Shown here: in pieces, positions 5,602-63,823 of the stretch | Numbering within the stretch: the stretch's first letter is position 1 | Layout: the number at the start of each line of letters is the position of its first letter | IMG/VR virus record: IMGVR_UViG_3300043436_004687 | Location: 124,001-188,000 of that record | Reading direction: 5' to 3' (one strand) | DNA length: 64,000 nucleotides | Program-made: the position numbers and the translations under genes | Notes under the pieces: generated by a model | Databases searched by the model: none | What the model was told of the DNA's origin: nothing | What the model saw: the letters and a program-made list of their open reading frames with translations, nothing else

Positions 5602-7008
5602 TTAATAATTATTATCTATATTTGAGGTTATTATGATTGGAATTATTTCACTTATTGCGGTTGAATTAAATTCATCACCTAAAATATTCTTATAAACTTT
5701 ATTATTTACTACCCTATAATAAAGTTTGTCGCCCAACCCACCACTAAGAGTTAATTTACCATTATAAACTTTATTAGCGATTTCATAATTAACGATAACT
5801 TCATCAATTATATTCGAAAAAGTTTTTGTGTTTGATAATTGTAAATTAAAATAACCATTATTTTTATTAGGATGTTTTTCAATGGTCCAATAGATTTCTA
5901 ATTCTTTTTTGTTAACATTACCAACAAAAGTTGGATTTCCATTATAAACTATATTTACAACATCACCGAATTCTAAATTAACCTCTAATATAATTCGTTT
6001 ATTGTTAGAAGTTGATAAATGATAATCTAACCCATTAGCCAAAACATTACCATTTAAAGACAATAAAAAATCATTACCCTTATTAGGTGTAACATCTAAA
6101 TATATTTCATGTTTAGATGTTGTGGTGTTATAATAAAATTTATTCACACCCTGGTTATTAATTGAACCACTTAAAATTGATTTATTAATGGAAAACGAAT
6201 CTATTACTAAACCATTTTTACCACCCTTACCCACATAAAATAAAGTTACCACATCATTTTCTTGAGCTTGATTGAATAAATTAATTTGGTTATTATTAAC
6301 TATAGAAAAATCTAAATCTTGTGCTAAAACATTACCATTCAAGGTAACAATTGGGTTACCTATTAGACCGTTATCTAAAAAAAATGTTGTTTCACCAGAA
6401 GAAATAAAAGAAATTGAATTTAAAGAACCTATAGATTTTTGAGAATTAGGTGTTAAACTAAAATTAGGTGTGCTTGCCGAATAAATAACAGCAAAATAAT
6501 TATCAAATACATTATTATATAAATAAAATTCAGAGTCATTAGAAAATGATGAGGATTTATTAATATAACCCAATCTATTTAATATGTTAGTACAATTAGG
6601 GGTTAACCAATTAGGTTTAATTATAAATTCAGAATCTTCAATTATGTTTAAAGATGTAAACCCACTTAAAATATTAGTTGATTTAAATTCACTATACTGA
6701 TAATCCTCAGATATAAAAAAATTAGGGTGATTAAAACTCAAATTATTATAATCAAATTTAAAAATACTATAATTAAAAATAGATTCATCTCTTAAATCAC
6801 TTAAATTTTGATTAAAATTAAAAATTAATGATAAATCAAAATTTGGTGAGTTTATAAAATAAACTGATTCATCACTTTCTGTCATCCCACTAATTAATTT
6901 AGTTGCCCCACTAATTTCAAAATTAGGAATTTGGAAGGTGCAGATATCTGAGCTAATATTGTAATTAACATTTTCAATTTGATCATATATTATAGCTTGA
7001 TTTCTCAT
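5602..7008 (-). CDS. putative structural protein
   Basis: 468 aa; repeated LNGNVLAxxLD(F/Y) beta modules; within structural operon. Confidence 0.5.
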   Translation of the reverse strand: MRNQAIIYDQIENVNYNISSDICTFQIPNFEISGATKLISGMTESDESVYFINSPNFDLSLIFNFNQNLSDLRDESIFNYSIFKFDYNNLSFNHPNFFISEDYQYSEFKSTNILSGFTSLNIIEDSEFIIKPNWLTPNCTNILNRLGYINKSSSFSNDSEFYLYNNVFDNYFAVIYSASTPNFSLTPNSQKSIGSLNSISFISSGETTFFLDNGLIGNPIVTLNGNVLAQDLDFSIVNNNQINLFNQAQENDVVTLFYVGKGGKNGLVIDSFSINKSILSGSINNQGVNKFYYNTTTSKHEIYLDVTPNKGNDFLLSLNGNVLANGLDYHLSTSNNKRIILEVNLEFGDVVNIVYNGNPTFVGNVNKKELEIYWTIEKHPNKNNGYFNLQLSNTKTFSNIIDEVIVNYEIANKVYNGKLTLSGGLGDKLYYRVVNNKVYKNILGDEFNSTAISEIIPIIITSNIDNNY

Positions 7009-7228: not shown

Positions 7229-9073
7229 TTAAATATTATTTAAAATTATTTCATCATTAACAAAATTAGGGTCACCTAAAATCGTAATTTTACCTAAAAA
7301 TTCAGACCCATCATCTATTTGATAGATATAAACCGAATTACATTTTTCAGTACTATTATCTATTTTTTTAGTTATTTCTATATTTTCATAACCTATTATA
7401 GGATAACTAATTATTCGTTCACAACTAAATAAACTATATTTTTTATAAACGAATTTATTATTATCGAAAATTGTATTACCAAATTTATATGTTGAACCCC
7501 ATAAAGTGGTTGATGGGATTAATTGTTCAACTAAATCAACCCAATTGTAATTAGTGTTAATTATATAATCAAATATTAAATCATAATTATAACCATTACT
7601 TTGAATATTACAGTTATTTAAACTAGCTACATAACCATCAAACAATTTTCTTAATACTGGATAAACACTTATAGTTTTTCTTGATTTAACATCAATAAAA
7701 TTAGAATTAATTATTTTATTGAAGTTTTCAACATTAATAAAATCTTTATAACCTAAGATGAAATCATCAAGTAAATGACGAGTACAAGAATTAGTATCAA
7801 TATAATTCATTACATCAAATTCTATGGCTCTAGCCATATTTAAATTTAAGTTTATTTCTTTTGAATTTAAGGCTAATTTACTATTATTAATTTCATAATT
7901 CGTTTCACTGTTTACTAAATCAAAAATTCTATTTTCATAAACTTCATTTACAACCCAACTTTTCTTATTATCAATAACCTTTTCTAATTTAAAATTAGGG
8001 CAATTATTTATTTCTAATGAATTAATTTCAACATAATTACATAATTTATCTATCTTTACATTATCTATTAACATAGATATTTCAATACCTATGTTGTCTA
8101 AATTAAACCCTATTTTTATTTCCTCATTTTTAATTAAATTAATTAAAGCTGGGTCAGTTATAGTTAAATTAAAATTATACCAATTTGAATTTAATGAATC
8201 GGGATTTAAAACTAAATTATAAACATTTAACAATTGATTAGTTAAATTATTGATTAAGGAATTACAGTCACCAATAATTTTAATACCACTATTAGGTAAC
8301 TGCAACTTATCTAATAAATTTAAACCATTAAATAGAGTATTTGTATAAACAACATCCATTTTTTTTGGTGATTCGAAAATATAACCCAATGTAGTTTCAC
8401 TAAGTTCTCTATTTACCAATCTTTCTAAACTCATTGTTATTGAAATACCACTCAATGAATTAATTACATTATTAACACCATTTTGACTTATCAATTGATT
8501 ACAATTAACCTCAATTAGATAATCAAAATTAATATTTAATGTACATTCTTCCGAATTATTAACATCAAAAATACTACCCTCAGAACCATTTGTGTTTAAA
8601 TACAATTTTGAGTTTAAATCAGAACAATCATCAACCCAAAAACACTTATTTAAATTTGGATTAAATCTAAACCCTAAATTGGAACAGCAAACACTACTCA
8701 AAGAAATATTAGTTGATCCATTATAAATAACACCATCATCTTTAAATACATAACTATCCATTAAATCACCATTCGTATCATTACAGACTGGTAAATCATT
8801 AACTGAAAAATCAAAAATAAAAGAATAAATACCAGTATCATTTAATATTAATTGTATAGACAATTCTTTACTATTAATCAAAGTATATTGGTGATTATTT
8901 AAATTTAAAATGTCAAAATTACTTTCGAAGATTAATTCATTACCCAATAATTTAAAACCAAAATCATATATTTTAGCATTATTCGTAAAATCCCAGGCAT
9001 TGAACCAAGACCCATTTATTAATTTATATAAATTAGTGTTTGAATCGAAAATAATATGTGAAGAAAAATTCAT
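7229..9073 (-). CDS. putative structural protein with Cys-rich motif
   Basis: 614 aa; CCSNLGF...CFW motif; WVDLVEQLIPSTTLW segment; operon context. Confidence 0.55.
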   Translation of the reverse strand: MNFSSHIIFDSNTNLYKLINGSWFNAWDFTNNAKIYDFGFKLLGNELIFESNFDILNLNNHQYTLINSKELSIQLILNDTGIYSFIFDFSVNDLPVCNDTNGDLMDSYVFKDDGVIYNGSTNISLSSVCCSNLGFRFNPNLNKCFWVDDCSDLNSKLYLNTNGSEGSIFDVNNSEECTLNINFDYLIEVNCNQLISQNGVNNVINSLSGISITMSLERLVNRELSETTLGYIFESPKKMDVVYTNTLFNGLNLLDKLQLPNSGIKIIGDCNSLINNLTNQLLNVYNLVLNPDSLNSNWYNFNLTITDPALINLIKNEEIKIGFNLDNIGIEISMLIDNVKIDKLCNYVEINSLEINNCPNFKLEKVIDNKKSWVVNEVYENRIFDLVNSETNYEINNSKLALNSKEINLNLNMARAIEFDVMNYIDTNSCTRHLLDDFILGYKDFINVENFNKIINSNFIDVKSRKTISVYPVLRKLFDGYVASLNNCNIQSNGYNYDLIFDYIINTNYNWVDLVEQLIPSTTLWGSTYKFGNTIFDNNKFVYKKYSLFSCERIISYPIIGYENIEITKKIDNSTEKCNSVYIYQIDDGSEFLGKITILGDPNFVNDEIILNNI

Positions 9074-9078
9074 AAGTT

Positions 9079-11331
9079 TTAATATTTACATAAATAATTA
9101 CCATTAGCTTGTAATTCAGGAGTTGTACCAACTGGACAACACTCTTGGAATGGTATTTCTTTGGTGAATTCACCATTTGTATTAATAAAGATTTGATATC
9201 CATTAGAAGATATTTCATGTAATAAGAAATCTTTACACAAATCTGAATTATTAACTTTCCACCTACAAACTGATGCACCATTAGTATCTAATTCACTAGT
9301 ATAACCCAAAGCAATACAACAATCACTATTAAAATTGTAGGTTGTTGATTCATCATTTAAAGTAAATAAAACTAAACCACTATCCATCAATTCAATTGAT
9401 TTATAATTACAAGTTAAATTAATTGGTTTTGGTGAAAAATTTATTTTTAAAACCCCCTTACAACTTTCAATAATGCAACCACACTCATCATATAATGGTG
9501 TTTTATCGTACTCTACAATACTACTACTTACAATTGGGCAATTGTTAGTGGTTAAAATAGTTTGTTGCACTATAGGTGAATTATCATTCAAATCACAAAA
9601 AGTACCTAATTGATTATTTAAGAATAAATTAGTTTTCTTAAATAAAATATCTTCATTTATTAGGGTAGTTGCTGAAAAAGATGGTATTAAACAATTAAAT
9701 TGATTAATATATTCATTACCATAATCATATGGCCCTAAATGAGGGTTATTACCAGTTAATATATCTAATTTTGAGTTGACCCCACCAGTTTCTCTAATCC
9801 ACAACCCACCTTTCTGAAAATAAAGATCTGGATTGTTAGGGTTTATTCTTGGGAAACCATCGTCATCGACATTTATAGACTCATCTAAAACTAAATTTAA
9901 GTTTTCCAACAACCTATTAAATAAATTAATATCTAATTTATTTTTAGCGACATATATAAATTCATTAAACTCAACTAAACCATTAGGAAAACCAAATAAT
10001 TTTAAGATAAATTCAATTGATTTTCTATTACCTTTAGATTTCCAAATCCAAGGTGTATTAATTATTAATTTTTTATAAAATTCTATATTATTTTCACTAT
10101 TATCAATAAATGGTAAATTATTCCAACCTAATAAATGGGCTAAACTTTTTAATTCTCTATCAACAACATTATCATTACCATCATAAGTAACAGTATAAAC
10201 ATTTGAAATACCATCAATAAAACTTTTGATTGAATCTAATTGCCTACCGTAAATATTTAATACTTTATTTATTTTTAAATCTAGCGTATCAAATTCTAAA
10301 ATTGAATTTGATACTAACAATCTACTTATAATATTAGATTTAGTATCATCAGAATTTTCAGAAATTGTAATTAATTTATTTACAAAATCAATATAATAAT
10401 CTGAATTAAAATCAATATTGTACCCGTCACTTATAGGCCAAATTATTTCAATTGTAGATTTGATAAGATTCCCCTCTTCAGTTTCAACGAAATAGTCAAA
10501 TTCAGATTTAAATTTAGGTGTTGTTTTATTGTTTAATAAATAGCTTTCAAAAACACTTAATTTTTTAAAAAAATTATCAACATTTACACTATTTGGTTTA
10601 ATATGATAAACGGTTGTATTAGTTAAACCAGAAAAAGGTTGACCACTTACTTTAAGATTAACATACCCATTAACTTCACCTATAAAATCTATTATCTGAT
10701 ATTCAATACCATCAACTGATAAAACATAATTAGAAAAGTTTTTATTTAAATTTCTAAGATCATTTAAAGGGTTTTTATTATTTAATGAACTCCCATTTAA
10801 ATAACTAATATCTAAGTTAAAATTATTATTAATAACGTTAACATTTATCGAGAATGTTGATTCACCTTTCAATTCATTAACCACATAATTATGAAAAGTA
10901 ATACCATTAAAACGTGGATTGTTTGGGTCTATCGGACTAATGAATAGTGATGCTGGCCAATTAATAATTATGTTTTCCAAACTAACCCTAACAAACTCTT
11001 TTAAAGAACCAAAATAAGCGTAATTTTTTAACTCTTTCTTATTAAAATTAATTTTTACTTCTTCTAATTCTTTTAAAATATTAGAAGCAATTGTTTTAGT
11101 TAGTTTTAAATCATCTAAAGAAGTTAAATTACCAAAAGAATTAGTTGAAAAAAATTTATCTTCTTTAGGTTCTAAATTCGTTGTAATATTAAAGTTACCA
11201 GAAGTAAATAATGGGGAATCATTATTATTTTGAAATTGATTCCCCACCAAACCACTCGAAAAAGGTCTATATTCAATACCATCAACGTATTGAATTTTCT
11301 TAGAATAACCAGCAACTTTAATTTTATTCAT
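9079..11331 (-). CDS. putative baseplate protein (P2 gpI / wedge-like segment) with Cys-rich C-terminus
   Basis: LAHLLGW...IWKSKGNRKSIEFILKLFG resembles the KGT..I...L..FG wedge motif. Confidence 0.55.
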   Translation of the reverse strand: MNKIKVAGYSKKIQYVDGIEYRPFSSGLVGNQFQNNNDSPLFTSGNFNITTNLEPKEDKFFSTNSFGNLTSLDDLKLTKTIASNILKELEEVKINFNKKELKNYAYFGSLKEFVRVSLENIIINWPASLFISPIDPNNPRFNGITFHNYVVNELKGESTFSINVNVINNNFNLDISYLNGSSLNNKNPLNDLRNLNKNFSNYVLSVDGIEYQIIDFIGEVNGYVNLKVSGQPFSGLTNTTVYHIKPNSVNVDNFFKKLSVFESYLLNNKTTPKFKSEFDYFVETEEGNLIKSTIEIIWPISDGYNIDFNSDYYIDFVNKLITISENSDDTKSNIISRLLVSNSILEFDTLDLKINKVLNIYGRQLDSIKSFIDGISNVYTVTYDGNDNVVDRELKSLAHLLGWNNLPFIDNSENNIEFYKKLIINTPWIWKSKGNRKSIEFILKLFGFPNGLVEFNEFIYVAKNKLDINLFNRLLENLNLVLDESINVDDDGFPRINPNNPDLYFQKGGLWIRETGGVNSKLDILTGNNPHLGPYDYGNEYINQFNCLIPSFSATTLINEDILFKKTNLFLNNQLGTFCDLNDNSPIVQQTILTTNNCPIVSSSIVEYDKTPLYDECGCIIESCKGVLKINFSPKPINLTCNYKSIELMDSGLVLFTLNDESTTYNFNSDCCIALGYTSELDTNGASVCRWKVNNSDLCKDFLLHEISSNGYQIFINTNGEFTKEIPFQECCPVGTTPELQANGNYLCKY

Positions 11332-15500: not shown

Positions 15501-18500
15501 TATAAATCATTTTGAGTTATTGTTATTATATTAGACGTACAAACATTATCACGCTCAATAACAAATAATTTATCATCTAAAACAAAATTAGGATAATCAA
15601 ATAATAAGAAACCGCTATTAGGTGCAACTACAGTACCTATAATTGTAGTATCAACATTTTTAAAGAAATCATAAGTTAAACCTGGTACATAATTGGTGAT
15701 TCGAACTCTAAATGGGAAACCACTAATATTAGTTGGATCTGGAAACACTCTACTTAATATCAAATTAATTTGTTCTGGGATAACTATAGTACCGTTTATT
15801 AAAACGTTTTGACCTACGGAATCAGTAACACTAACAGAATAATTACCATTGGGAACTGCAAATTGATTTAAATTTGTTGAACTATAATTTATTGTTTGAC
15901 CAGAACTATTCACCAAATTAATTCCATTGGTAATTACGGAATAAGGTACGATACCACCACTAACGGTAGTCTTTATTGAACTAGAATTAGGATCATCACA
16001 ATCAGAGTTAGTGAATGTTGTAGTTACTGATAAAGGGGTGGGGTCCAATATATCAATAGTGTATGTGGTACTCAATTGTGGAGTACTAGTATCAGTTATA
16101 GTTAAAACATAAGAACCAGAAATTAAATTATTAAATTGATAAATTAAAGTTGGGTTTACAATATTGAAAATACCACTAGGACCACTCAAAATCATAGTAT
16201 AATCATTATTACCACCGAATATACTATTAATAAACAATTTACCATCATTATTTCCAACTCCAGAAGTAGTTCTTATAGTAAATTCACAATTTATTGGTTG
16301 TGGTTGATTTACCCTAAATGTTCTTTTATTTATAGATCCGTTGAAATCCGTGACTATTACCGTGTATTCCCCAAATGTTAAATTGTTTATATCTTCTGTG
16401 ATTTGGTTATTACTCCAGAGATAGGTGTAAGGTCCAACACCACCCACAATAGAAATATTAATAGAACCATTATTACCTCCAATACTTGTTACATTAGAAA
16501 CTACACCATTAATAATAAAATCTGGTTTTTCCACTCTATCACAAGTTGTGAAATATTTTCTATTCATTTTATCAATAGCTGAATTATTAGGCGATGTTCC
16601 AAAATAAAAATAAAATGAATTACCTTTAAATTGGTCAACATTTCTATTTAATGAATTTCTATAATTATTATAATGTAAACCATTAAAACCACTATTTAAA
16701 GGAAATGCAGATGGTAAAATAGAATTTGAATTTAAATAAATTAAAGCATCTCTAATAAATTGATTCTCAATGTCTTCATTAGAAATTACACCATCATTAA
16801 CGGTCCCATTTAAAAAGACACTCCTATCTTCGTCCAAACCAACACCTATTTCACATAATCTTTTTATATTTTCAATTTGGGTTGAGTTAGATGTTAAATC
16901 AACACAAGTTAAATTGAACAATAAACCATTATTTGGTTTACCATCATTTGCCATTTCAGTCACACCATTTTCCTCACCCTCGAATTTTGGTGGTAATTGA
17001 TAAGTAGTAGGGATTAAAAATTTATGTATTGATGGTTTAGATTGCCAATCACAATCAAAAACACTACCTAAATTTAAAATATCCGTTGCAAATAATAAAT
17101 ACTCTTGGTCTTTATCAAATGGGCTATAGAATAACTCACCATTATACTTTTTTACTAAACCATGAGATATTTTAGCACTTGTATTTGATTTTAAACTACC
17201 ACTAGTTAAAGTATCAACAATAAAAATATCTTCATTATTATCCACATCACAAAATTTCTCAACATTTTCCTTTTTTTTATATTTTAATAAGAAAGAAAAT
17301 AAAGTACCATTAATCCAATCATTATAAAAATCAAATTCATAGATATTTAAAGATTCTGCTAAACTTAATTTATAACACTCATGCAAATCTTCTGATGAAG
17401 TATTCACACCGTTGTTAGCAGCATTCCCATAACAACCTGGAGCAAAAGAATAACCATCGCAAGACAAAGTAATACATCTTAATGATTTAAACGGTCTAAT
17501 ACCTAAAAATTTTATATTATGTAAGAAACTTAAAATCCCATTTAAAACAGATAAGATAAAAATTATAATACCAATTATAATACAAATAATTAAAAAAATA
17601 GGATTGAAATCACCATCTAACCTATTAAATGGAAATGGATTTTTAAGACCAACACAATTATCAACATCTTTAATACCAATCATTCTTCTATTATCAGAAC
17701 AATTAGAATTACAAGAATTTTGTATTCTAGTGATATGGTTTCTAACAGTATAAATTTTATTCCAATAAAAATCTCTAAAATGATTATCACTAGTTTCCTC
17801 ACCAAAAGAAAAATCTTGATCTAACGAATTAATTGGGTTATGAGGAACTAAATATTTAGCATGAGTTCTTAATCTACCCTCACCACCAGAATCATCAACA
17901 CTAATTTTAAATCTACTTCTACATCTAGTTGGAATACCTTTACTAGGATCATCAGATGGTACTAAATTACCCAACTCATCTGTAACCAAATAATCTAAAT
18001 TCATAGGTAAAGAATATGCCCAAGTACCATCCTCATCTATTAACCTACCACCATCTATATCAAAATTTTCGGTTTGTCCATCTAAAGTTTTTCTAATCAT
18101 GTTAATGGTACCTTCATTGGAAATGGTCTCACAAATTCTCCCTAAATCCTTTCTAGGGATACAATTCTTATTAACGCTATTTTTATCGTTGTCTCCAAAT
18201 ATACTACCAATAAAAATAGCAGTTGGTTCTATGTTGAAATTTAAATCAACATCGACCCTTGAGATACCGATTTCATTGTTTAAATTCTCACCCCAAAAAG
18301 GTATTACATTAACGCCTATTTCTTGATGTTTTATTTGAGTTAAGTAATTAAGATTTTTATCTACTTTAAATTTAGTTGAAGAGGCAAATTGTTTAGCTGA
18401 AGAACCCTGGTCGATAAAATTATAAGGTCTTTGAGAAAATATACCCACATCAGATAAATCAACATCTACATTTAACAAATGATTACCAACGGGCACACCA

Positions 18501-55100: not shown

Positions 55101-56124
55101 TTAATTCCCCAATTAATTTAAAACTACTATCTTGATAAATATTCCTATCAATTCTAATGTTTATATTATCACCTATTGAAACATTAAATGGTAAACTTAT
55201 TGGGTTACCATTAATAGTAAAAGTCGGGTTAGAACAATTTACTAAATTATCAATATTAACAATTCTTTTTTCATTCGTTATGGTAAAATTAGTTGATGTG
55301 AACTCAGAACAAGAAAAAATAAAATCATAAATAAAATTTTCATTGGTTTTTGAAACAACGTATTTTGGTTTAAAAGATTTTTTTGAAATTTCACTAAAAA
55401 CCACACCCCTACTAATTGTAGGTATTACCTCAAATTCATTTTCATTTAAAATATATCCTTGCAATGTAATTTCATTCAAATTGATATAAAATCTTTTACC
55501 TTCTAAATCGTAAGGACTTTCATCACTAACACTTTCTCTTATTGTTGGCATTGGGTGTCCATTAACATTGATATAAGCTTGTCTAGCATTATATATGGTT
55601 GACATTTTACTTGAAAAAGTATTAATTTCTTCTAATCTATTACAAAATAATCTAACCTCATAATTAATATCAACACAAGTAGGTTGTGGTATTTTATATA
55701 AATCAATTCCAGTTCTACCACCTTCATTTATTGGTACTTTAATATATGTATAATTCCTATGACCAGGTATATTCCATAAGCCAATTTGGTTAGTACCTTC
55801 TTGAATATCTGGTTTTCTAACAATAGAAATAAATGGTAATTTCAAGTCTTTAAAATTATCAGTAAATTCCCAAGTTTTTGAAAATTCTGACCATCTTTGG
55901 ATTGTTAATAAAATAACTGGTACTTTTTTACCTTTTATAGTTAACTCTAGCTCATCCCTAATAAAATTTTCAAAAGCATCATCCATATCACCAATAGTGA
56001 TACCATTAGGTAAAAAATCACCCTTGTTAAAAATATTTTCACTAATTTCTTTTCGTCTAGTAACACCTTCGTTTAATGGTGCTAATCTAACATTTTTTAT
56101 AAATCCTTTTCCTAATGCACACAT
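55093..56124 (-). CDS. tail terminator / sheath stabiliser (gp15-like)
   Basis: KVPVI..QRW, LPFISIVR, PQPTCVDINYEV; position next to neck gene. Confidence 0.55.
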   Translation of the reverse strand: MCALGKGFIKNVRLAPLNEGVTRRKEISENIFNKGDFLPNGITIGDMDDAFENFIRDELELTIKGKKVPVILLTIQRWSEFSKTWEFTDNFKDLKLPFISIVRKPDIQEGTNQIGLWNIPGHRNYTYIKVPINEGGRTGIDLYKIPQPTCVDINYEVRLFCNRLEEINTFSSKMSTIYNARQAYINVNGHPMPTIRESVSDESPYDLEGKRFYINLNEITLQGYILNENEFEVIPTISRGVVFSEISKKSFKPKYVVSKTNENFIYDFIFSCSEFTSTNFTITNEKRIVNIDNLVNCSNPTFTINGNPISLPFNVSIGDNINIRIDRNIYQDSSFKLIGELNE

Positions 56125-56126
56125 AT

Positions 56127-56651
56127 TTATTTACCTGAAAATTCATTATTATCAATAGCAGCACAAACCACCGTTCTATAATATCCTTTATAACCCATTA
56201 TTGTATGTGAGTTATCAAAATTTTTAATTCCATCATCAACTATGGCATAAAATATTCTAATATTTTCATTAGTATCAAAACCTATGAAATCACCGTAAGT
56301 CAATTCAATTTTTAATTCATCTAGTGTTTTATTAAATACCTTAAACGTTAATTTACCATTTTGAGCATAACGTAAAGTTCCACTATTATTATTATATGCT
56401 TTATTTTCTGTTTTATCTATTTTATAAGAAGCTACATATAAATCAATTGGTTCATGATAATTAATTTGATCTTCATCAGCTTCACCATATCTATCCATCA
56501 CCTGAGTCTTAGTTCTATCAACTCTATATAATATAACCTTGGTATTATTATCACCCTCTAAAGCTTCTCTACTAAAATCTATCTCTAATTGATAATCAAT
56601 ATCTGAAAAAAATTTATTATTTCTATTTATTGGAGTTGCTTCTTTATTCAT
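56127..56651 (-). CDS. head completion / neck protein (gp14-like)
   Basis: VILYRVD....DRYGEA, GDFIG; neck-region context. Confidence 0.5.
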   Translation of the reverse strand: MNKEATPINRNNKFFSDIDYQLEIDFSREALEGDNNTKVILYRVDRTKTQVMDRYGEADEDQINYHEPIDLYVASYKIDKTENKAYNNNSGTLRYAQNGKLTFKVFNKTLDELKIELTYGDFIGFDTNENIRIFYAIVDDGIKNFDNSHTIMGYKGYYRTVVCAAIDNNEFSGK

Positions 56652-56738
56652 AATGGAGTATTTAACTATAAATATTGATTTTTATAATAAAAATGATTAT
56701 ATTATTTCTGTAACTAATAAAACAATTATAATAATGAT

Positions 56739-58565
56739 TTGATAGATTTAAGTAAAATAAAAAGTCGTTCGGCAATCACCAATTTAGAAAATTATTCTGG
56801 TAAAAATCCTTATTTGAGAAAATTGAAGTTAGATTTCTTAAAAACAAGAAATATTAACTTTACTGAAACTCAAATACGATACATTAATAATTTTCATAGT
56901 TTAGAACCACAATTAATAAATAGAGTGGTTTCACTACAAGAATTCTTCGGGTTACAACTTCAAGAACAATTAAAGCTTGAGTTTATACCAAAAAGAATTT
57001 TAATTGAATATATGCTTGCAGATACTGATAAAAGTTACCATGTATTTGGAAAATTAACAACCAAACAAAAAGAATCTAAAATGTATTGGTTACCTAAATC
57101 AATGGTTTTAGATGATCCTTATTTTGAGGAAATTAATGTTGAAGTTGATTTTACACCATATGAAAAATGTTTACAAGAGAAAAAAGGTTTTAAAGTATTA
57201 GAACATCAGAAATCGGGTGTTAAATTTTTATTAAGTAGAAAAAAATGTATCCTTGGTGATGATATGGGTGTTACAAAGACAGTCACTTCAATTATGGCCG
57301 CTATTGAAGGTGGTTATAAAAAAGTTTTAGTTATTTGCCCAGCTTCAGTAAAAATAAATTGGGAGCGTGAGATAAACATTTTTGATGATAATACTTGTAT
57401 TGTTGATGGAATGCGTTGGGAAGAAAATAAATTCACTATAATTAATTATGATATTCTTAGAAATTTTCACTCGGTAGGTAAACCAAATACAGAAGAAGGT
57501 GAAAAGGCAATTAGAAACATTGTTAATGGTAATTTTGATTTAATAGTAATTGATGAGGCACATAAAATTAAGGATAAAGATTCTATTAGGAGTCAAATTA
57601 TTAATGATATTTGTCTTAATTATGGTGATAAAGATGTTTGGTTATTAAGTGGTACTCCAGTGGCAAACAGACCTATGGATTTTTATAATCTTTTAAAATT
57701 AATTAAATGTCCTTTAGTTGAAAATTGGAATTTTTATGTGAAACGTTATTGTGATGGTAAACAAATAACTACCACTTTAAAAAATGGTAAAAAGAAAAAA
57801 GTTTGGATTACTAATGGAGCCTCTAATTTAGAAGAATTACAAGTTAGAACTAAAAATATACTTTTAAGGCGTTTAAAATCTGAGGTTTTAGATATGCCAG
57901 AAAAAACAATCACTAATGTATTTCATAAATTAGATGATTCTTCGTTTAAAGAATATGATAGAATATGGGATGAATATTTACTTGAAAGAAAAGCTTTAAA
58001 AAAGAAGGGTACCGTCTCTAGAGAAATGACTGAATCGTTATTTTTACGTAAATTTATTGCTATGCAATCCATTCCACATACAATTGAAATGGTGAATAAT
58101 GCGATAGAACAAGGTGAAAAGGTAGTTGTATTTACAACTTTTAAAGATGAACAAAAACAATTAGAAGAGGCTTTTGGTAATATTTGTGTGGTTCATAATG
58201 GTGATATGTCTAATAAAGATAAACAAATATCAGTAGATGCCTTCCAAAATAAAGATAAGATAAAAGTATTTATTGGTAATGTGATATCAGCTGGTGTTGG
58301 GATTACATTAACTAAGGGGTCTATTTGTATATTTAATTCTTTTTCTTGGGTTCCTGGTGAAAATGAACAAGCTGAGGATAGAATCTATAGATTAGGTCAG
58401 TTAAACAATTGTAAAATTTACTACCAAGTATTTTTAGATACGATTTCAATAAAAATGTTAGAAAGTTTAAAAAGAAAGAGTAGTAATATTAGTAAAATTG
58501 TAGGTGATAAAGAAAAAGAAGAGTCTTTAGAATCTATATTAGATGAAATTTTAAATTATGAATAA
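56739..58565 (+). CDS. SNF2-family (SF2) helicase
   Basis: HQ..GV, DDMGVTKT, IDEAH, LSGTPVANRP, LRRLK, GVGITLT, QAEDRIYRLGQ. Confidence 0.9.
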   Translation: MIDLSKIKSRSAITNLENYSGKNPYLRKLKLDFLKTRNINFTETQIRYINNFHSLEPQLINRVVSLQEFFGLQLQEQLKLEFIPKRILIEYMLADTDKSYHVFGKLTTKQKESKMYWLPKSMVLDDPYFEEINVEVDFTPYEKCLQEKKGFKVLEHQKSGVKFLLSRKKCILGDDMGVTKTVTSIMAAIEGGYKKVLVICPASVKINWEREINIFDDNTCIVDGMRWEENKFTIINYDILRNFHSVGKPNTEEGEKAIRNIVNGNFDLIVIDEAHKIKDKDSIRSQIINDICLNYGDKDVWLLSGTPVANRPMDFYNLLKLIKCPLVENWNFYVKRYCDGKQITTTLKNGKKKKVWITNGASNLEELQVRTKNILLRRLKSEVLDMPEKTITNVFHKLDDSSFKEYDRIWDEYLLERKALKKKGTVSREMTESLFLRKFIAMQSIPHTIEMVNNAIEQGEKVVVFTTFKDEQKQLEEAFGNICVVHNGDMSNKDKQISVDAFQNKDKIKVFIGNVISAGVGITLTKGSICIFNSFSWVPGENEQAEDRIYRLGQLNNCKIYYQVFLDTISIKMLESLKRKSSNISKIVGDKEKEESLESILDEILNYE

Positions 58566-58821
58566 AATAACTATAATTTCGGCACCCTATTGTTCATATT
58601 GTTTAGAATTAAAAGAAAGATTAGGTAGATTAGATTTAAAATTCAATGATGTGGACATTACATTAGAAGAAAATAAAGTTGAATGTGAAAGATTATTTAA
58701 ATTTACGAATTCAGATTCTATCCCAATAATAATAGTTGGTAAAAATATTTTAATACCTAATAACAGTTTTAAAACTATTGAAGAAGCTTCTTTATTAATA
58801 GAAAAACTATATAAAGAATAA
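58558..58821 (+). CDS. glutaredoxin-like protein
   Basis: CSYC active site, SIP cis-Pro loop. Confidence 0.85.
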   Translation: MNKITIISAPYCSYCLELKERLGRLDLKFNDVDITLEENKVECERLFKFTNSDSIPIIIVGKNILIPNNSFKTIEEASLLIEKLYKE

Positions 58822-58847
58822 AATTAAAATATTTATAAATAAAAAAC

Positions 58848-59978
58848 ATGGCAATTTCAACAAAAGATAAAGATAAAATTTTTACTCAATTTAAACACCT
58901 TATAGGTGCTCCGATAAGATCAGCTGTCATAACTGACGAAATGCTTGAATCTTGCCTTGAATTAGCAATATCTGATTATTCTCAATATGTTCAAGAATGG
59001 CTTATTGAAAATAATTGGCAATCGTTATTTGGTAAAAATATAGATACTACTGATTTTGCATTTGCTTTGAGCACTAGAAGTCTTGATTTTACAACTCAAT
59101 CTACTTACGCTTACTCTAAAAAAGTTGGTTTACAAGCAAATGGTCCTTGGGAATTGAAAAAAGATTTCATTGATATTGAGCCTGGTAGACAAGTTTATCA
59201 AATACCAGCTGGTAGAGAAGTTAATGAAGTACTTTGGATTACCCCATCAAGTATTGATGCTGCTATATATGCAAATTATGGTGGTCTTAATGCTGGTTTT
59301 GGGTCAAGTTTAGGGCCAGTTAGTACTGGTTATAATTCTGGTGGTATGGTTGGTGGTTATTATTTAGCACCAGCATTTGATATTTTATTAACAGCTTCTG
59401 ATTTAGGTTTAAAAAATAAAATACTTAGAAGTGATTTAGCTTATAAGATAACAGCTGGTCCAGATGGTACTAGATTACTTCATCTTATGAATGTTCCAGG
59501 GTCTAAATTAAATTTTGGTGGACCATCTAATCAAAATGGTATATTAGGTTCTGTGGGTAGTAGAGTTTGGTATCATTATTATGAAACATCCCCAGAAAAT
59601 TTAGATAAATGTAGAGAATTAAATCCTGATATTGTTAAAATGCCTAACGAGGTTCCATTAGATGAATTAAGTTATTCTGATTTAAATTCACCGACTAAAA
59701 CACTTGTTAGACAATTATTTTTCGCATATGCGAAAATGTCTTTAGCTAATGTTATGGGTAGATTTGGTGGTGTTGTAGGTGTTGAAGGTGCTGAAAGAAC
59801 TATGAATTATGAATCTTACGCTAATGATGGTAAAGAAGAACGAAAAGAAGTTTTAGCTAGGTTGGATGAAAGACTTGTTAGATTATCCTCAGAAAAACAA
59901 TTAGAAAGAGCAGCTTCAGAAGCTGAAAATTTAAATAAAACACTACAATATCAACCATTAGGTATTTATATTAAATAA
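58848..59978 (+). CDS. neck / head-tail adaptor protein (gp13-like)
   Basis: IGAPIRSAVITDEMLESCLELAI N-terminus; AKMSLANVMGRF; C-terminal PLGIY. Confidence 0.7.
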   Translation: MAISTKDKDKIFTQFKHLIGAPIRSAVITDEMLESCLELAISDYSQYVQEWLIENNWQSLFGKNIDTTDFAFALSTRSLDFTTQSTYAYSKKVGLQANGPWELKKDFIDIEPGRQVYQIPAGREVNEVLWITPSSIDAAIYANYGGLNAGFGSSLGPVSTGYNSGGMVGGYYLAPAFDILLTASDLGLKNKILRSDLAYKITAGPDGTRLLHLMNVPGSKLNFGGPSNQNGILGSVGSRVWYHYYETSPENLDKCRELNPDIVKMPNEVPLDELSYSDLNSPTKTLVRQLFFAYAKMSLANVMGRFGGVVGVEGAERTMNYESYANDGKEERKEVLARLDERLVRLSSEKQLERAASEAENLNKTLQYQPLGIYIK

Positions 59979-59979
59979 A

Positions 59980-60010
59980 AAAAATGCGATTAATAAATAA
60001 TCGCATTTTT
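59980..60010. terminator. bidirectional intrinsic terminator
   Basis: AAAAATGCGATTA-ATAAA-TAATCGCATTTTT between convergent genes. Confidence 0.85.
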
Positions 60011-60013
60011 AAT

Positions 60014-63000
60014 TTAATCTCTAACCTCAAATTCTTTGGGTAATATTACATTATCTGGAATAAATTTCTTTAGTTTCTCAAATAAACCTTTTATTGTATC
60101 TATTGAATGTCCAGCATTTTCAGTGCCGAATTTAGTAACTAAAAATTTAAGGTGTGGGTGTTTTTTAGCATATAATACCATATCTTGTATTCCTTTACCT
60201 ATTTCGTTAGGGGTTTTACTTAATTTAGCACCTGGACTAGTAACCGTTGTTATTCCCCAAGCTTTACCACAATTTGATAATCTATTGTCCATAATTTCTC
60301 CTTGTTCTACCCAACCATTAGCAGTTGCGACACTAGCAGACATGTTAGGATATTTTTCTGGGTTTCCATTAATACCTAATGGGTTAGAACCAAAGACAAA
60401 TACTTCGTTTTCCTCTAAATAAGTAATTTTTTGAGATGTATATTCTTTATAATTTTCAAAATATGTGTTTTTAGTTAATATAATAGGTTCAATATTTTCT
60501 TCGTTAACAATATCCTTAGTTTTCAACCAATCTTCATAGGTTAATTTTTCAGTAGAATTTGACATGTAAAATTCATCTCTTTCAATGGCATCATTTTCAT
60601 ACAAAAATAAATCTGTTAATGAGTAAATAATGTCTTTACCATATTTATCAGATATTAAAAGTAATTCATCGTTTATGGTTTCTGTTGATAAAAGCATTGA
60701 TAATGATTTAGGTAAAACACCATGATTTCTAAAATCATTTATATCTGATAATTCTAATCTTTTTATTCTATCATCAATTAATAATTTTTCGTTAGCAATT
60801 CCTTCTATTCTATCTTTAGCAACTCTTTCTAAATATTCTGATTTTATTATTTCCCATTCATTCTCATCAATGTTGTTAGGAACTTTATTAACTCTAGTCC
60901 AGAATGCTAATTCCTTATCTTCAAATGTCATCAAAGCTTCATAAGTATCTTGATCAGACTCAAGAAATGGTTGTCCAGAACATAATTCACATTCTTTTCT
61001 AGTGAAAAATTCCCTATCCATTAATTCCATTTCTTTTGTTTTACTATTCTTTTTATAATCAATTAGAATTCTGTTTCTAATTTCTGGTGTAAAACAAACT
61101 AATAGTGGTTTAATCCTTTTATTAAAAGCGGCAAGATACTTAGGTGCATTATATTCATCCGTTGTCAAATTAGGGTTATTTTCAATTTGTTCCGTTGGAA
61201 TTAATTTACACATCAATTCAACTTCAACTCCACCCCCCGCTTTTTTTATGGTTTTAATATCACCTTGTGTTTTTAATGTACCAGTATTAACATAATAGAT
61301 GATATCACCTAAATTAAGTTCTAAACCTTCTTTTAAGGCTAACTCCATATGTGCTTGTCTTGGCATTGGGTTACCAGCTTTATTCTTTTTAGAAAAACCA
61401 GCTTTATACGCTGATATTGTTTTTCTAATACTAGATTTAGAAGCTATTTTTACTAATGGTACTTGATAATTTATAATAGTTTGAACAGTTTTATGATAAG
61501 TTTCAATAAACTCATAACCATCACCATCTAAAAGCATTTTTATGCCCTTATCTAAAAATTCTTCTATATAAATTGGCATTTTTTTAGATTTAATAGTATT
61601 ACCTACTAATTTAATTTTACCATTTAAATTATTGGCATAATTTTTTCTAGCAAAATTAATTGTTGAAGTATATTTTGCATCAATATCTAAACCCATTTTA
61701 CCAAACATTAATTCTTCATTAAATTTAGCTACGGCAGCGTTTAATCCATTAATTTCTATTCCCTTGTATTTTTTGGTTAAACTATGAGTTCCTTTAGGCG
61801 TATATTTAAATTCTTCTAAACTATCTGGTAAATTAAAATTGTATCCATCAGTATCACCTACCAATGGTCTCATTTTATGATTATTATAAAAATTCTTAAC
61901 CATTAATCTTAGATATTGTCTACCCCTACATGTAATTTCAGCAGCGCAATCAATATCACCCCACGGAAATAAGTGCGGTGCTCCAAACGAACCAAAAAAT
62001 GAGTTAGCTAAAATTTTAACTGGTAATTGTTTTTTATCAAATTTATCGGCCAATCCCAATTCAATTTGTCTTTTAGTTTCTAGATTTTTTATTTTAGTGG
62101 GTGAATATATTTCTTTATTTTCAATAATTTCTTTTTCTAAAGCTTCTGCATTTTCTTCGTGAATACCTTTTAATTCTTTACTACTATCTCTAGTTTCAAC
62201 AATATAGTTTAATAACCCCATCATTACACCTGAAATGTCGTGTTCTGGAAATATATCATGTGTTAGTTGTTCTTTTGGGTATAAAGCAGCGTAGTCTAAT
62301 TTTCCCACATTTTTAGCATAACCCACTTCTAATAATCTTGAAAGACCACCAGGAAAAGTTTCTTGTGATTGTAGTTCTGGAATTGCAAGATTATTTTCAT
62401 AAGACCAAGCCATCATGATTAATTTCCAAATACCAGCAGTTCCCATTGTAGAACTTCTCATATAAGAAGTTGGAATAAGTTTACCTAATAAAAATGTTGC
62501 TTGATTAAAACGAGCGTCTACTTGTTCAGTTTCCCAAAGGTCATCAATAAGATATCTTCTTACTATTTCATCACCAGTAGTTTCAATATATCTATTAGTC
62601 TCTTCTAAATTAGATATTTTATCAATATGTTCCTGATTAGTTTCATCGTATTTAAACCAATCACCATTAGAATCATTTAAATAATATTTGTTTTTCCTAT
62701 CGGCCCATGTTTTATGGATTATTGAACCATCAATGTAAATTCTATTTGGTTTTGCTATTTTTGAGAATTTTGTAATGTATTTTAAACCTGCTTTTTTAAT
62801 ATCTGAATTAATTGCTTGTGCTCTTCTAACGGAGTGCATCACATCAATAACATTGGTACCCCAAATACAAGTTTGTTTATAATGTTCTACATTACCACCT
62901 AATTTTAATTGGGCATCTTTACGGTGTATTTTTATTTTTGGGTTTAAAGTTTTTGCAATTTCATCTATTTTTAAACTTAATATATCACCTCTACCAAAAA

Positions 63001-63823
63001 AGAAATCCCAGTCAAAATTCTCAGAGTTATAACCAGCTATAATATCTGGGTTTATTTCATGTACAGTGTCAAAAAATTCTTTTATTGCTTCTCTTTCACT
63101 ATCTCTTAATTCTTTACCAGCTAAACTTTTTAATCTTAATAATTGATCTTCTGTAACGCTACTGGGGTCTTTTTCAATATCGTTTAAGGCATCTTGAATG
63201 ATATCTGGTACTTTTACCTCAATAACTTTTTCAAAGCCTCTATTATCTTTCATTCCGATTTGGAATATACTATTTTGACTATGAAATAAACCAGTTGTCT
63301 CAAGGTCAAATTGAAATCTATGCAACTCATCATATTCTTCAAAACCTTTAAATAATCTTTTACCAGTTTGAATTAAAAATTGTTCTGTTGGTGAACAAGT
63401 CATAAAATATTCTTTAAAATTTTGGTCAAAAACATCTACACCACCTTCTTTAAAGAAATTTAATAAATCGGTATATGAGCCATCACATTTAGCAATGTAT
63501 TTATAACCATTCTCCATTCTTTTTGGTGTAATTCCATTATTATCAGTTTTTAAAGCTGATATCTTAACATTGAATTTTTTAGTTGCCTTTGAAATTTCAG
63601 TTCTATCACCACCATACATGATAGAAGCCATCTCATGTTTTAACCACAAAAATGGTTTATATGAAACTTTTTGTATGTATTTACCTTTAACTGGGTCATT
63701 TATTATTAATGATACAGTATTTTGAAAATATGCAGCCTCTATTGCTACAATGTATTTTTGTGGGTCTCTACCTTCTAAGAAGGCTCCGATTTCTTCCCCA
63801 CTGACTTGTTGTTTTTTACTCAT
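60014..63823 (-). CDS. family B DNA polymerase with C-terminal macrodomain-like fusion
   Basis: Exo FDLETTG, GYNSENFDW, YLIDD; Pol LDYAALYP, KILANSFFG, GDTDG; C-term EVFVFGSN...FLVTKFG...NVILP. Confidence 0.92.
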   Translation of the reverse strand: MSKKQQVSGEEIGAFLEGRDPQKYIVAIEAAYFQNTVSLIINDPVKGKYIQKVSYKPFLWLKHEMASIMYGGDRTEISKATKKFNVKISALKTDNNGITPKRMENGYKYIAKCDGSYTDLLNFFKEGGVDVFDQNFKEYFMTCSPTEQFLIQTGKRLFKGFEEYDELHRFQFDLETTGLFHSQNSIFQIGMKDNRGFEKVIEVKVPDIIQDALNDIEKDPSSVTEDQLLRLKSLAGKELRDSEREAIKEFFDTVHEINPDIIAGYNSENFDWDFFFGRGDILSLKIDEIAKTLNPKIKIHRKDAQLKLGGNVEHYKQTCIWGTNVIDVMHSVRRAQAINSDIKKAGLKYITKFSKIAKPNRIYIDGSIIHKTWADRKNKYYLNDSNGDWFKYDETNQEHIDKISNLEETNRYIETTGDEIVRRYLIDDLWETEQVDARFNQATFLLGKLIPTSYMRSSTMGTAGIWKLIMMAWSYENNLAIPELQSQETFPGGLSRLLEVGYAKNVGKLDYAALYPKEQLTHDIFPEHDISGVMMGLLNYIVETRDSSKELKGIHEENAEALEKEIIENKEIYSPTKIKNLETKRQIELGLADKFDKKQLPVKILANSFFGSFGAPHLFPWGDIDCAAEITCRGRQYLRLMVKNFYNNHKMRPLVGDTDGYNFNLPDSLEEFKYTPKGTHSLTKKYKGIEINGLNAAVAKFNEELMFGKMGLDIDAKYTSTINFARKNYANNLNGKIKLVGNTIKSKKMPIYIEEFLDKGIKMLLDGDGYEFIETYHKTVQTIINYQVPLVKIASKSSIRKTISAYKAGFSKKNKAGNPMPRQAHMELALKEGLELNLGDIIYYVNTGTLKTQGDIKTIKKAGGGVEVELMCKLIPTEQIENNPNLTTDEYNAPKYLAAFNKRIKPLLVCFTPEIRNRILIDYKKNSKTKEMELMDREFFTRKECELCSGQPFLESDQDTYEALMTFEDKELAFWTRVNKVPNNIDENEWEIIKSEYLERVAKDRIEGIANEKLLIDDRIKRLELSDINDFRNHGVLPKSLSMLLSTETINDELLLISDKYGKDIIYSLTDLFLYENDAIERDEFYMSNSTEKLTYEDWLKTKDIVNEENIEPIILTKNTYFENYKEYTSQKITYLEENEVFVFGSNPLGINGNPEKYPNMSASVATANGWVEQGEIMDNRLSNCGKAWGITTVTSPGAKLSKTPNEIGKGIQDMVLYAKKHPHLKFLVTKFGTENAGHSIDTIKGLFEKLKKFIPDNVILPKEFEVRD

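What the first reader, a model, noticed from the sequence alone, without database searches (positions are those of the whole stretch)
60017..60443. Replicative DNA polymerase fused to a macrodomain-like module
Seen: after the PolB core and a linker, the last ~140 aa read ITYLEENEVFVFGSNPLG…AWGITT…YAKKHPHLKFLVTKFGTENAG…NVILP. From recall, this resembles a normally stand-alone small phage protein family (FVFGSN…FLVT.IGCG.AG) with a macro-like fold; here the Gly-rich loops are diverged. Established: DarT-type defences ADP-ribosylate phage DNA and block replication, and macrodomains (DarG) remove the mark. Inference: a fork-tethered ADP-ribose reader or eraser acting as built-in anti-defence.
Basis: inference. 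Interest (0 to 1): 0.7.

Follow-up and report, generated by a model that had tools for sequence, protein, structure and literature searches.

The report
Phage DNA polymerase with built-in macrodomain
The only replicative DNA polymerase of a 340-kb freshwater jumbo phage really does end in a DarG/TARG1-like macrodomain (an ADP-ribose-handling fold), a fusion seen in no relative, but the domain lacks the catalytic lysine of the known DNA de-ADP-ribosylases, so whether it erases or only recognises the mark is open.

Summary
Observation confirmed. ORF 60014-63823(-) encodes a 1269-aa family-B polymerase with intact exonuclease and polymerase motifs. Its last ~142 residues (60017-60442) match NCBIfam NF049995 (A1S_2505 phage family) above cut-off. 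An AF2 model (pLDDT 91.7) matches macrodomains almost exclusively, with DarG, Poa1p and TARG1 on top (Z 11.4-10.7). The fusion is real: the reading frame is continuous, and mismatch-free contigs from other lake metagenomes span the junction. It is also unique. None of 120 PolB relatives (up to 74% identity) carries the domain, and none of ~190 domain-bearing proteins has a PolB core. The domain replaced an acidic W-x-F C-terminal tip found in 90/120 relatives. Its nearest copies (80% identity) sit in 3-4 kaa phage polyvalent proteins. Family context is strongly NAD/ADP-ribose- and DNA-linked (PIF1-type helicases, NADAR, ART, SLOG, ADP-ribosyl-GH fusions). The same genome has a canonical stand-alone copy beside SIR2, Prs, YpsA and PARP-like genes. 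Profile alignment to phage AdfM/DarG keeps the ADP-ribose-contacting Asn and Thr, but puts Val1194 at the catalytic Lys (TaqDarG K80). A family-conserved loop Gly is Met1161. The fold and the fusion are therefore supported; the "eraser" function is untested and cannot use the DarG mechanism. Verdict: new variant of a known kind, moderately interesting.

The parts
60014..63823 (-). Complete ORF (with stop 60014-60016) of the 1269-aa family-B DNA polymerase-macrodomain fusion. It is the only PolB or PolA gene detected in the 339,635-bp genome.
62816..63331 (-). 3'-5' exonuclease domain (res 165-336), with ExoI FDLET and ExoII NSENFD present
61271..62320 (-). Polymerase palm/fingers region (res 502-851), with motifs A (DYAALYP), B (KILANSFFG) and C (VGDTD)
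60521..61270 (-). C-terminal part of the PolB core (res 852-1101). It is conserved in all relatives; homology to relatives ends at ...LTYEDWLK (median query end 1101).
60443..60520 (-). Linker (res 1102-1127, TKDIVNEENIEPIILTKNTYFENY...). It has no homology to relatives' tails, 19% GC, and low model confidence (pLDDT 52-68), so it is a likely flexible tether. It sits where relatives carry an acidic tail ending W-x-F.
60017..60442 (-). A1S_2505-family macrodomain (res 1128-1269), the finding itself
60383..60385 (-). Asn1147 of the invariant F-G-S-N motif. It aligns with AdfM N23 / TaqDarG N22 (ADP-ribose contact; mutation lowers activity).
60341..60343 (-). Met1161 in loop 1, where 57/60 family members have Gly. 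The change is shared with a small subclade (P0170, P0171, P0187, P0184, P0012, L010).
60242..60247 (-). Thr1193-Val1194. The Thr is invariant (aligns with DarG T79). Val occupies the column of the catalytic Lys (AdfM K78 / TaqDarG K80); in the family this column is K in 108 and V in 69 of 187 instances.
60110..60127 (-). Loop 2, G1233-T-E-N-A-G1238. It aligns with the AdfM G-C-A-N-G-G / DarG G117-G121 diphosphate-gripping loop; G1238 is invariant in the family.

Best explanation
Shown: the phage's sole replicative family-B polymerase carries a folded macrodomain of the A1S_2505 family (DarG/TARG1/Poa1p-like branch) on a ~26-residue flexible linker. The module was captured from the pool of domains that circulate in phage polyvalent proteins, and it replaced the ancestral acidic W-x-F C-terminal tip. 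Inferred: it is an ADP-ribose-recognising module held at the replication fork. There it would meet ADP-ribosylated template bases (the lesion made on ssDNA by DarT-type defence toxins, which blocks phage replication) at the moment the polymerase stalls. It would then either remove the adduct or mark/hold the site for bypass or repair. The ADP-ribose-contacting Asn, Thr and loop-2 glycines are kept, but the DarG/TARG1 nucleophilic Lys is Val. Any hydrolysis must therefore use other residues. Candidates are those conserved only in this 'V-type' branch: K1157 in the loop-1 insertion and D1179-N1180 in a second insertion.
For: Family: NF049995 above cut-off. Fold: AF2 pLDDT 91.7. Foldseek PDB top hits are DarG macrodomains, and nearly all of the top 50 are macrodomains. 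The Foldseek-independent VIA search gives DarG Z 11.4, Poa1p 11.1, TARG1 10.7 and DarTG 9.8, and the first 27 hits are all macrodomains. The Swiss-Prot AFDB top hits are four DarG proteins. Sequence link to DarG: 7/60 family members hit the PADLOC DarG HMM (best 1.7e-5). hhalign against PhiKZ AdfM gives E 1e-4 over 111 in-register columns. DNA and ADP-ribose context of the family: fusions to PIF1/AAA_30 helicases (8/28), NADAR (3), cpYpsA (3), ART-PolyVal and AlkB-like oxygenase; phage DNA helicase fusions in BFVD; ADP_ribosyl_GH fusions. The genome's own canonical paralog sits between Prs and SIR2, near YpsA and a PARP-like ART. Selection: all nine family-invariant residues are kept, and dN is 0.19 against a saturated dS versus a polyvalent-protein copy. 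Biology: a jumbo-phage macrodomain, AdfM, removes DarT2 marks from DNA. A phage can also escape DarTG2 through DNA-polymerase mutations, which links this defence to the polymerase (PMC13309987, PMC10760071).
Against: Val1194 sits at the catalytic Lys column, and K80A kills TaqDarG. Met1161 replaces a near-invariant loop-1 Gly. The window copy itself hits neither the DarG HMMs nor Pfam Macro. The hhalign probability is only 57%. No ligand-binding evidence exists (one search was not folded). The fusion is a singleton lineage, so it has no comparative support. The host and its defences are unknown. The closest structural relatives also include a phosphatase of a soluble metabolite (Poa1p).
Confidence: 0.45

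Rival explanations
1. The domain handles a soluble NAD/ADP-ribose derivative rather than DNA adducts. Candidates are ADP-ribose-1''-phosphate, O-acyl-ADP-ribose, or a cyclic/linear ADPr immune signal. It would act by hydrolysis or as a sponge, and the polymerase is merely a convenient carrier expressed early.
For: Poa1p (an ADP-ribose-1''-phosphate phosphatase) is the second-best structural match (Z 11.1). The stand-alone paralog lies in an NAD-metabolism / RNA-repair-like island with Prs, SIR2, HAD_SAK_1 and YpsA. Published comparative analysis favours soluble ADPr derivatives as targets for many phage Macro/NADAR/SLOG domains (PMC9503650). The catalytic Lys of the DNA/protein de-ADP-ribosylases is missing.
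Against: A soluble-ligand enzyme gains nothing obvious from being tethered to the polymerase. The genome already has a stand-alone copy for such a role. The family's most frequent fusion partners are DNA helicases.
Confidence: 0.2
2. The domain is a non-catalytic docking module. It functionally replaces the lost acidic W-x-F tip, for example by binding a replisome partner, or an ADP-ribosylated protein made by the phage's own PARP-like or SIR2 enzymes.
For: The domain sits exactly where 90/120 relatives carry the conserved acidic W-x-F C-terminus. The catalytic Lys is absent and a loop Gly is changed. The genome encodes a PARP-catalytic ART and a SIR2 that could create ADP-ribosylated partners. 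Non-enzymatic reader macrodomains are known (macroH2A, ALC1; both appear among the matches).
Against: No partner has been identified. 30/120 relatives also lack the W-x-F tip, so it may be dispensable. The ligand-contacting residues remain conserved, as in enzymes.
Confidence: 0.15
3. The fusion is a recent recombination accident with little or no function: a passenger domain tolerated on a variable, dispensable tail.
For: It is a singleton. No second PolB-macro fusion was found among 120 relatives, ~190 domain carriers, IMG/VR or JGI metagenomes. The PolB tail is hypervariable in length (6-191 aa) and content.
Against: All family-invariant residues are retained, the fold is predicted with confidence, and there are no frameshifts. 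GC3 is identical to that of the core (0.167 against 0.158), so this is not a very recent foreign insert. The same sequence occurs in several lake samples from 2023-2024. The record is a complete genome with direct terminal repeats.
Confidence: 0.15

Closest known systems
AdfM (PhiKZ gp104 and relatives), a jumbo-phage DarG2-like macrodomain that removes DarT2 ADP-ribose from DNA (PMC13309987)
   Same: Jumbo-phage-encoded macrodomain of the DarG/TARG1 branch. The alignment is in register (hhalign E 1e-4), with the catalytic-site Asn, the Thr and the Gly loop shared. Both are delivered to the site of phage DNA replication: AdfM by import into the phage nucleus, this one by covalent tethering.
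   Different: AdfM is a stand-alone 162-aa protein that scores 138 bits on the DarG NCBIfam model and has the catalytic Lys78. The window domain belongs to another family (NF049995), has Val at that column, gives no DarG HMM hit, and is fused to PolB.
DarG antitoxin macrodomain / human TARG1 (OARD1)
   Same: They are the best structural matches (Z 11.4 and 10.7). Some family members hit the DarG HMM.
   Different: About 10-17% identity. There is no DarT-binding C-terminal domain and no adjacent DarT. The Lys nucleophile (K80/K84) is replaced by Val in the window copy.
A1S_2505 family phage non-structural protein (NCBIfam NF049995; phrog_2072)
   Same: The window domain passes the curated cut-off and keeps the invariant F-G-S-N, T, G and N positions. 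The genome also has a canonical 139-aa member (130 bits).
   Different: It is fused to a polymerase instead of being stand-alone or part of a polyvalent protein. It belongs to a branch with two insertions, Val instead of Lys, and Met instead of the loop Gly. The family has no published function that I could find.
Phage/conjugative-element polyvalent proteins (Iyer et al. 2017, PMC5512222) and phage Macro/NADAR/SLOG fusions (PMC9503650)
   Same: The nearest copies of the domain (80%, 58% and 57% identity) lie in 3,275-5,453-aa proteins with PIF1-like helicase domains, next to an ART-PolyVal protein. This is the same shuffling domain pool.
   Different: Here the carrier is the essential replicative polymerase, not an injected multi-effector protein. 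I found no mention of a polymerase-macrodomain fusion in those surveys.
Macrodomains embedded in RNA-virus replicase polyproteins (alphavirus nsP3, coronavirus nsp3)
   Same: A macrodomain is physically linked to the viral replication machinery. These are structural matches with TM up to 0.60 and Z 9.7-10.2.
   Different: Those are RNA viruses of eukaryotes, with MacroD-type catalytic sites acting on ADP-ribosylated proteins. This is analogy only.

Membership tests
A1S_2505 family (NCBIfam NF049995) | HMM score above the curated cut-off (45 bits) | tested here: met
   51.1 bits in the whole protein and 57.1 bits for the domain alone; also phrog_2072 at E 6e-13
A1S_2505 family (NCBIfam NF049995) | Invariant positions of the family alignment (F, G, N of F-G-S-N; two Ala in helix 1; Thr; loop-2 Gly; C-terminal Asn) | tested here: met
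   F1144, G1145, N1147, A1163, A1166, T1193, G1238 and N1258 are all present
A1S_2505 family (NCBIfam NF049995) | Gly in loop 1 (G-G-A-A), present in 57/60 members | tested here: not met
   Met1161. The variant is shared by six other sequences, so it marks a subclade rather than decay.
Macrodomain fold | Three-layer alpha/beta/alpha fold that superposes on solved macrodomains over most of the domain | tested here: met
   Z 11.4-8.0 over 117-137 aligned residues (rmsd ~3 A; one 7.0 A outlier) for the first 27 hits, all macrodomains. Foldseek probability is 0.99 for DarG. A SLOG protein (ThsA) reaches only Z 7.2.
Macrodomain fold | Match to Pfam Macro (PF01661) | tested here: not met
   No Pfam hit for the window domain. 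Only 1/60 family members hits weakly, at E 0.0077.
Macrodomain fold | Binds ADP-ribose or a derivative | not testable with these tools
   The ligand co-fold job was not folded and is not evidence either way.
DarG/TARG1-type ADP-ribosyl glycohydrolase | Catalytic lysine (TaqDarG K80, TARG1 K84, AdfM K78) | tested here: not met
   hhalign places Val1194 at AdfM K78. The residue identities come from PMC13309987 and PMC5179494. 108/187 family instances do have Lys there.
DarG/TARG1-type ADP-ribosyl glycohydrolase | ADP-ribose-contacting Asn (N22), Thr (T79) and Gly-rich loop 117-121 | tested here: met
   N1147, T1193 and G1233-x-x-N1236-x-G1238 align to them. The alignment probability is only 57%.
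DarG/TARG1-type ADP-ribosyl glycohydrolase | Match to DarG profile HMMs | tested here: not met
   The window copy has no PADLOC DarG hit. NCBIfam lists no DarG model (NF048014) among its matches at E <= 1. K-type relatives hit weakly, at 1.7e-5 to 0.024.
DarG/TARG1-type ADP-ribosyl glycohydrolase | Removes ADP-ribose from DarT-modified ssDNA / rescues DarT toxicity | not testable with these tools
   Needs a biochemical or genetic assay.
Family B DNA polymerase | Exo I/II motifs and polymerase motifs A, B and C | tested here: met
   Pfam PF03104 and PF00136 above cut-off. The motifs were located. It is 50-74% identical to >100 metagenomic phage PolBs.
Polyvalent proteins of phages/conjugative elements | Many unrelated effector domains in one giant polypeptide, deployed at invasion | tested here: not met
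   The window protein is a two-part protein of PolB plus one module. Only the module's nearest homologues lie in polyvalent proteins.

The most novel reading that the evidence does not exclude
The replicative polymerase carries its own in-cis DNA de-ADP-ribosylase, using a lysine-independent catalytic mechanism peculiar to the 'V-type' A1S_2505 branch. The replisome would then clear DarT-type base adducts as it meets them. This would be the first counter-defence enzyme built into a replicative DNA polymerase, and a new catalytic variety of macrodomain.
Probability: 0.2. Interest if true: 0.8.

Novelty: new variant of a known kind. Interest (0 to 1): 0.55.

Why it matters
DarT-type toxins stop phages by ADP-ribosylating ssDNA. 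Known phage answers are stand-alone enzymes or inhibitors (AdfA/B, AdfN, AdfM) or polymerase point mutations. A macrodomain welded to the polymerase would merge these two routes and put the counter-measure exactly where the lesion bites. Independently of that, the work assigns a fold and a likely ligand class to a large uncharacterised phage family (A1S_2505 / phrog_2072). That family has 682 representative clusters, mostly inside giant polyvalent proteins. The family splits into a Lys-bearing, DarG-like branch and a Val-bearing branch, which gives clear and cheap biochemical experiments.

Tried and rejected
(1) My own first recall was that the FVFGSN...G.HG.GAA motif marks a SLOG/LOG-type Rossmannoid domain. 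I rejected this: all top structural matches are macrodomains, and the SLOG protein ThsA reaches only Z 7.2.

(2) I considered fusion by loss of a stop codon between PolB and a downstream stand-alone gene, and rejected it. In the syntenic contig of the closest relative (P0050), PolB is followed directly by the convergent gp13-like gene, with no small gene between. The window has only 35 nt between the two stops.

(3) I considered assembly or sequencing artefact, and rejected it on mismatch-free contigs from other samples.

(4) Sequence searches of the PDB, with the family profile and with the stand-alone paralog, gave nothing meaningful.

(5) The complex-prediction job with ADP-ribose was counted but not folded, so it gives no evidence.

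(6) A search for a second PolB-macro fusion found only polyvalent-protein copies and no PolB core. It covered IMG/VR, JGI metagenomes, 120 PolB relatives and ~190 domain carriers.

(7) DNA of the P0050 and P0170 contigs could not be fetched, so exact recombination breakpoints were not mapped.

(8) The other PolB tails gave no significant Pfam domain.

(9) No gp45-type clamp was found that could explain the W-x-F tip.

(10) Composition gives no sign of foreign origin.
Full report
**What is there.** The window is bases 124001-188000 of a 339,635-bp virus record with direct terminal repeats, rated complete. The record has 26% GC and comes from lake-water metagenomes. ORF 60014..63823 on the minus strand encodes 1269 aa.

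Pfam finds the family-B exonuclease domain (res 165-336) and the polymerase domain (res 502-851). The catalytic motifs are intact: FDLET172, NSENFD266, DYAALYP510, KILANSFFG603 and VGDTD655. No other PolB gene and no PolA gene is detectable in the genome, so this is the phage's replicative polymerase.

The last ~142 residues (60017-60442) match NCBIfam NF049995, 'A1S_2505 family phage non-structural protein', at 51-57 bits against a 45-bit cut-off. They also match phrog_2072, of unknown function. Pfam has no model for this stretch.

**Is the fusion real?** The frame is open throughout. The core/linker/domain junction lies at nt 60421-60523. Logan contigs from other samples and studies cover it without a mismatch or indel: X5 at 60336-60524 and 60509-60911, and X4 at 60350-60500. 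Ten lake or freshwater runs hold 18-100% of the sampled words of 59800-61000.

In the closest relative's contig (P0050, 74% identical PolB) the neighbourhood is syntenic: PolB, then a convergent gp13-like gene, glutaredoxin and an SNF2 helicase. There is no small gene after PolB that could have been fused by losing a stop codon.

**How unusual is it?** The polymerase belongs to a very large metagenomic clade, with more than 4,800 hits. None of the 120 best relatives (50-74% identity) contains the domain (hmmsearch). Homology ends at about residue 1101, at ...LTYEDWLK. After that point the relatives carry tails of 6-191 aa.

- The tails are mostly acidic, and in 90 of 120 they end in W-x-F at the C-terminus.
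- The four closest relatives all end in (D/E)WGF.
- In the window this tip is gone. It is replaced by a 26-residue linker with no homologue, followed by the domain.
- None of about 190 proteins that carry the domain has any PolB-core similarity.
- Junction-spanning searches of IMG/VR and JGI metagenomes found only non-polymerase carriers.

The fusion is therefore a singleton lineage. GC3 of the domain (0.167) equals that of the core (0.158), so it is not a compositionally fresh import.

**Where the module came from.** An exhaustive HMMER scan finds 682 representative clusters at E <= 1e-3.

- Most of the best hits are internal domains of giant proteins of 3,000-5,800 aa.
- The nearest are 80% identical: P0170 (3,275 aa) and P0171 (4,193 aa).
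- P0170 carries PIF1/AAA_30 helicase domains. It lies in a row of giant ORFs next to an ART-PolyVal protein, which is the signature of phage polyvalent proteins (PMC5512222).
- Among 28 mid-sized carriers, 8 have PIF1-type SF1 helicases, 3 have NADAR, 3 have cpYpsA-SLOG, 1 has ART-PolyVal and 1 has an AlkB-like 2OG oxygenase.
- BFVD matches are phage 'DNA helicase' and ART-PolyVal proteins.
- The ESM Atlas lists clusters fused to ADP-ribosylglycohydrolase (PF03747).
- AFDB clusters show fusions to TIGR02452, methyltransferase and DUF4326.

**Fold.** I built a 60-sequence alignment (A1) and used it for AlphaFold2. The model has mean pLDDT 91.7 and pTM 0.85. The first ~20 residues, which are the linker, are of low confidence.

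- Foldseek against the PDB puts the M. tuberculosis and T. aquaticus DarG macrodomains first (probability 0.99). Almost every one of the top 50 is a macrodomain.
- The Foldseek-independent VIA-align scan of 48,161 chains gives DarG Z 11.4, Poa1p 11.1, TARG1 10.7 and Thermosipho DarTG 9.8. The first 27 hits are all macrodomains.
- Against Swiss-Prot models, four DarG proteins lead, followed by Poa1, ALC1/CHD1L, MACROD2 and OARD1.

My own initial guess of a SLOG domain is rejected.

**Sequence-level link and active site.** Seven of the 60 family members hit the PADLOC DarG model, best E 1.7e-5, over the strand that carries the catalytic lysine and over loop 2. The window copy does not hit it.

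I fetched PhiKZ gp104. This is AdfM, shown experimentally to remove DarT2 ADP-ribose from DNA (PMC13309987). It scores 138 bits on the NCBIfam DarG model. hhalign of A1 against it gives E 1e-4 and probability 57%, with 111 columns in register. The alignment pairs the residues as follows.

- N1147 pairs with AdfM N23 (TaqDarG N22).
- T1193 pairs with T77 (TaqDarG T79).
- The loop G1233-T-E-N-A-G1238 pairs with G-C-A-N-G-G (TaqDarG 117-121).
- V1194 pairs with K78 (TaqDarG K80).

According to PMC5179494, N22, T79 and G117-G121 contact ADP-ribose. K80 is the nucleophile, K80A is inactive and fails to rescue DarT toxicity, and N22A has the next strongest effect.

Across 187 family instances this column is Lys in 108 and Val in 69, while Asn and Thr are essentially invariant. 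The window copy is 'V-type'. This type carries two insertions with their own conserved residues: NP-x-K-G-T-G in loop 1, and E-x-M-D-N. The window keeps K1157, D1179 and N1180.

It also has Met1161 where 57/60 members have Gly. That change is shared by P0170, P0171, P0187, P0184, P0012 and L010, so it marks a conserved subclade. Against the L010 copy, dN is 0.19 with dS saturated.

**Own-genome context.** The same phage has a canonical stand-alone family member of 139 aa, scoring 130 bits, with Gly in loop 1.

- It lies between a PRPP-synthetase-like gene and a SIR2 gene.
- A YpsA-SLOG gene, a HAD_SAK_1 gene and a PARP-catalytic-domain gene lie within 8 kb.
- A stand-alone NADAR lies elsewhere in the genome.
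- There is no Pfam-type Macro gene.

The family thus sits squarely in the phage NAD/ADP-ribose network described in PMC9503650. That survey lists no polymerase fusion.

**Interpretation.** Three things are shown: the macrodomain fold, a genuine and unique fusion to the sole replicative polymerase, and capture from the polyvalent-protein domain pool at the expense of the ancestral W-x-F tip.

What follows is inferred. The module recognises ADP-ribose, and because it is tethered to the polymerase, the likeliest substrate is ADP-ribosylated template DNA of the DarT kind. The literature supports the link. DarT blocks phage DNA replication. Phages counter it with AdfM or AdfN enzymes or with polymerase mutations (PMC13309987, PMC10760071).

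The missing lysine means the domain cannot work as DarG, TARG1 or AdfM do. It is either a reader or holder, or an eraser that uses other residues. I put 0.45 on 'fork-tethered ADP-ribose-DNA recognition or removal'. Within that, about 0.2 goes to true hydrolysis.

The rivals are:
- a soluble ADPr-derivative enzyme or sponge (0.2);
- a docking module that replaces the lost tail (0.15);
- a near-neutral passenger (0.15).

**Novelty.** Stand-alone phage macrodomain anti-DarT factors are now known (AdfM, 2026), and macrodomains in RNA-virus replicases are classic. I found no report of a macrodomain fused to a replicative DNA polymerase. I also found no functional description of the A1S_2505 family. 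I therefore rate this a new variant of a known kind. Interest is moderate (0.55), limited by the singleton status and the absent catalytic lysine.

Noticed in passing
L007 (= genome G000:C1:24000-43000, outside the window): 3986-4483(-), 6021-6563(-), 8021-9007(-), 9013-9432(-), 10022-10762(-), 15905-17176(-): An NAD/ADP-ribose gene island in the same phage. It holds YpsA-SLOG, HAD_SAK_1, a PRPP-synthetase-like gene, a canonical stand-alone A1S_2505 macrodomain, SIR2 and a PARP-catalytic-domain protein, interrupted by a GIY-YIG homing endonuclease. A stand-alone NADAR lies at G000:C1:94393-94806.
   Followed up: partly
C-termini of PolB relatives P0050-P0169; corresponding position in the window is 60443-60520: 90 of 120 relatives end in an acidic tail with a terminal W-x-F (WNF 38, WGF 26, WLF 17), which looks like a protein-docking tip. 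Its partner is unknown, and no gp45-type clamp Pfam hit exists in this genome. The window polymerase has lost the tip.
   Followed up: partly
Tails of PolB relatives (e.g. P0059, P0063, P0064, P0072, P0086, P0089; P0060, P0061, P0068, P0078, P0080): The variable tail carries other small modules: a Cys-rich RFNPxCTxKxCCS... segment in 8 relatives and a W.RKDWDYN... segment in 6. None has a significant Pfam hit. The PolB C-terminus looks like a hot spot for add-ons.
   Followed up: partly
P0055 (1486 aa), P0069 (1602 aa), P0101 (1558 aa): These PolB relatives are 300-450 aa longer, and only ~52% of the query is covered in one alignment. P0101 carries a LAGLIDADG domain (PF14528), which suggests inteins or homing-endonuclease insertions in this polymerase clade.
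   Followed up: no
L008 (contig of P0052) against window 56739-63823: The SNF2 helicase - glutaredoxin - gp13-like block is conserved. In L008, however, the PolB gene is inverted relative to it and an extra 288-aa gene lies between. The P0050 contig has the window's arrangement.
   Followed up: no
window 56001-60000 against the rest: GC skew is negative across the window (all large ORFs are on the minus strand). It turns positive (+0.05 to +0.23) exactly where the three plus-strand genes lie (SNF2, glutaredoxin, gp13-like), so the skew follows gene orientation.
   Followed up: no
window 56739-58565(+) and 58558-58821(+): The SNF2-family helicase ORF is listed with a TTG start and overlaps the following glutaredoxin-like ORF by 8 nt, which suggests translational coupling. 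The true start was not checked.
   Followed up: no
G000:C1:40786-40899(-) (L005), inside the 427-aa open frame listed, which contains the 423-aa PARP-domain ORF: There is a sub-threshold NF049995 match (11.6 bits, E 0.07) inside the PARP-catalytic-domain protein. It is probably chance, but it could be a degenerate macro-like segment.
   Followed up: no
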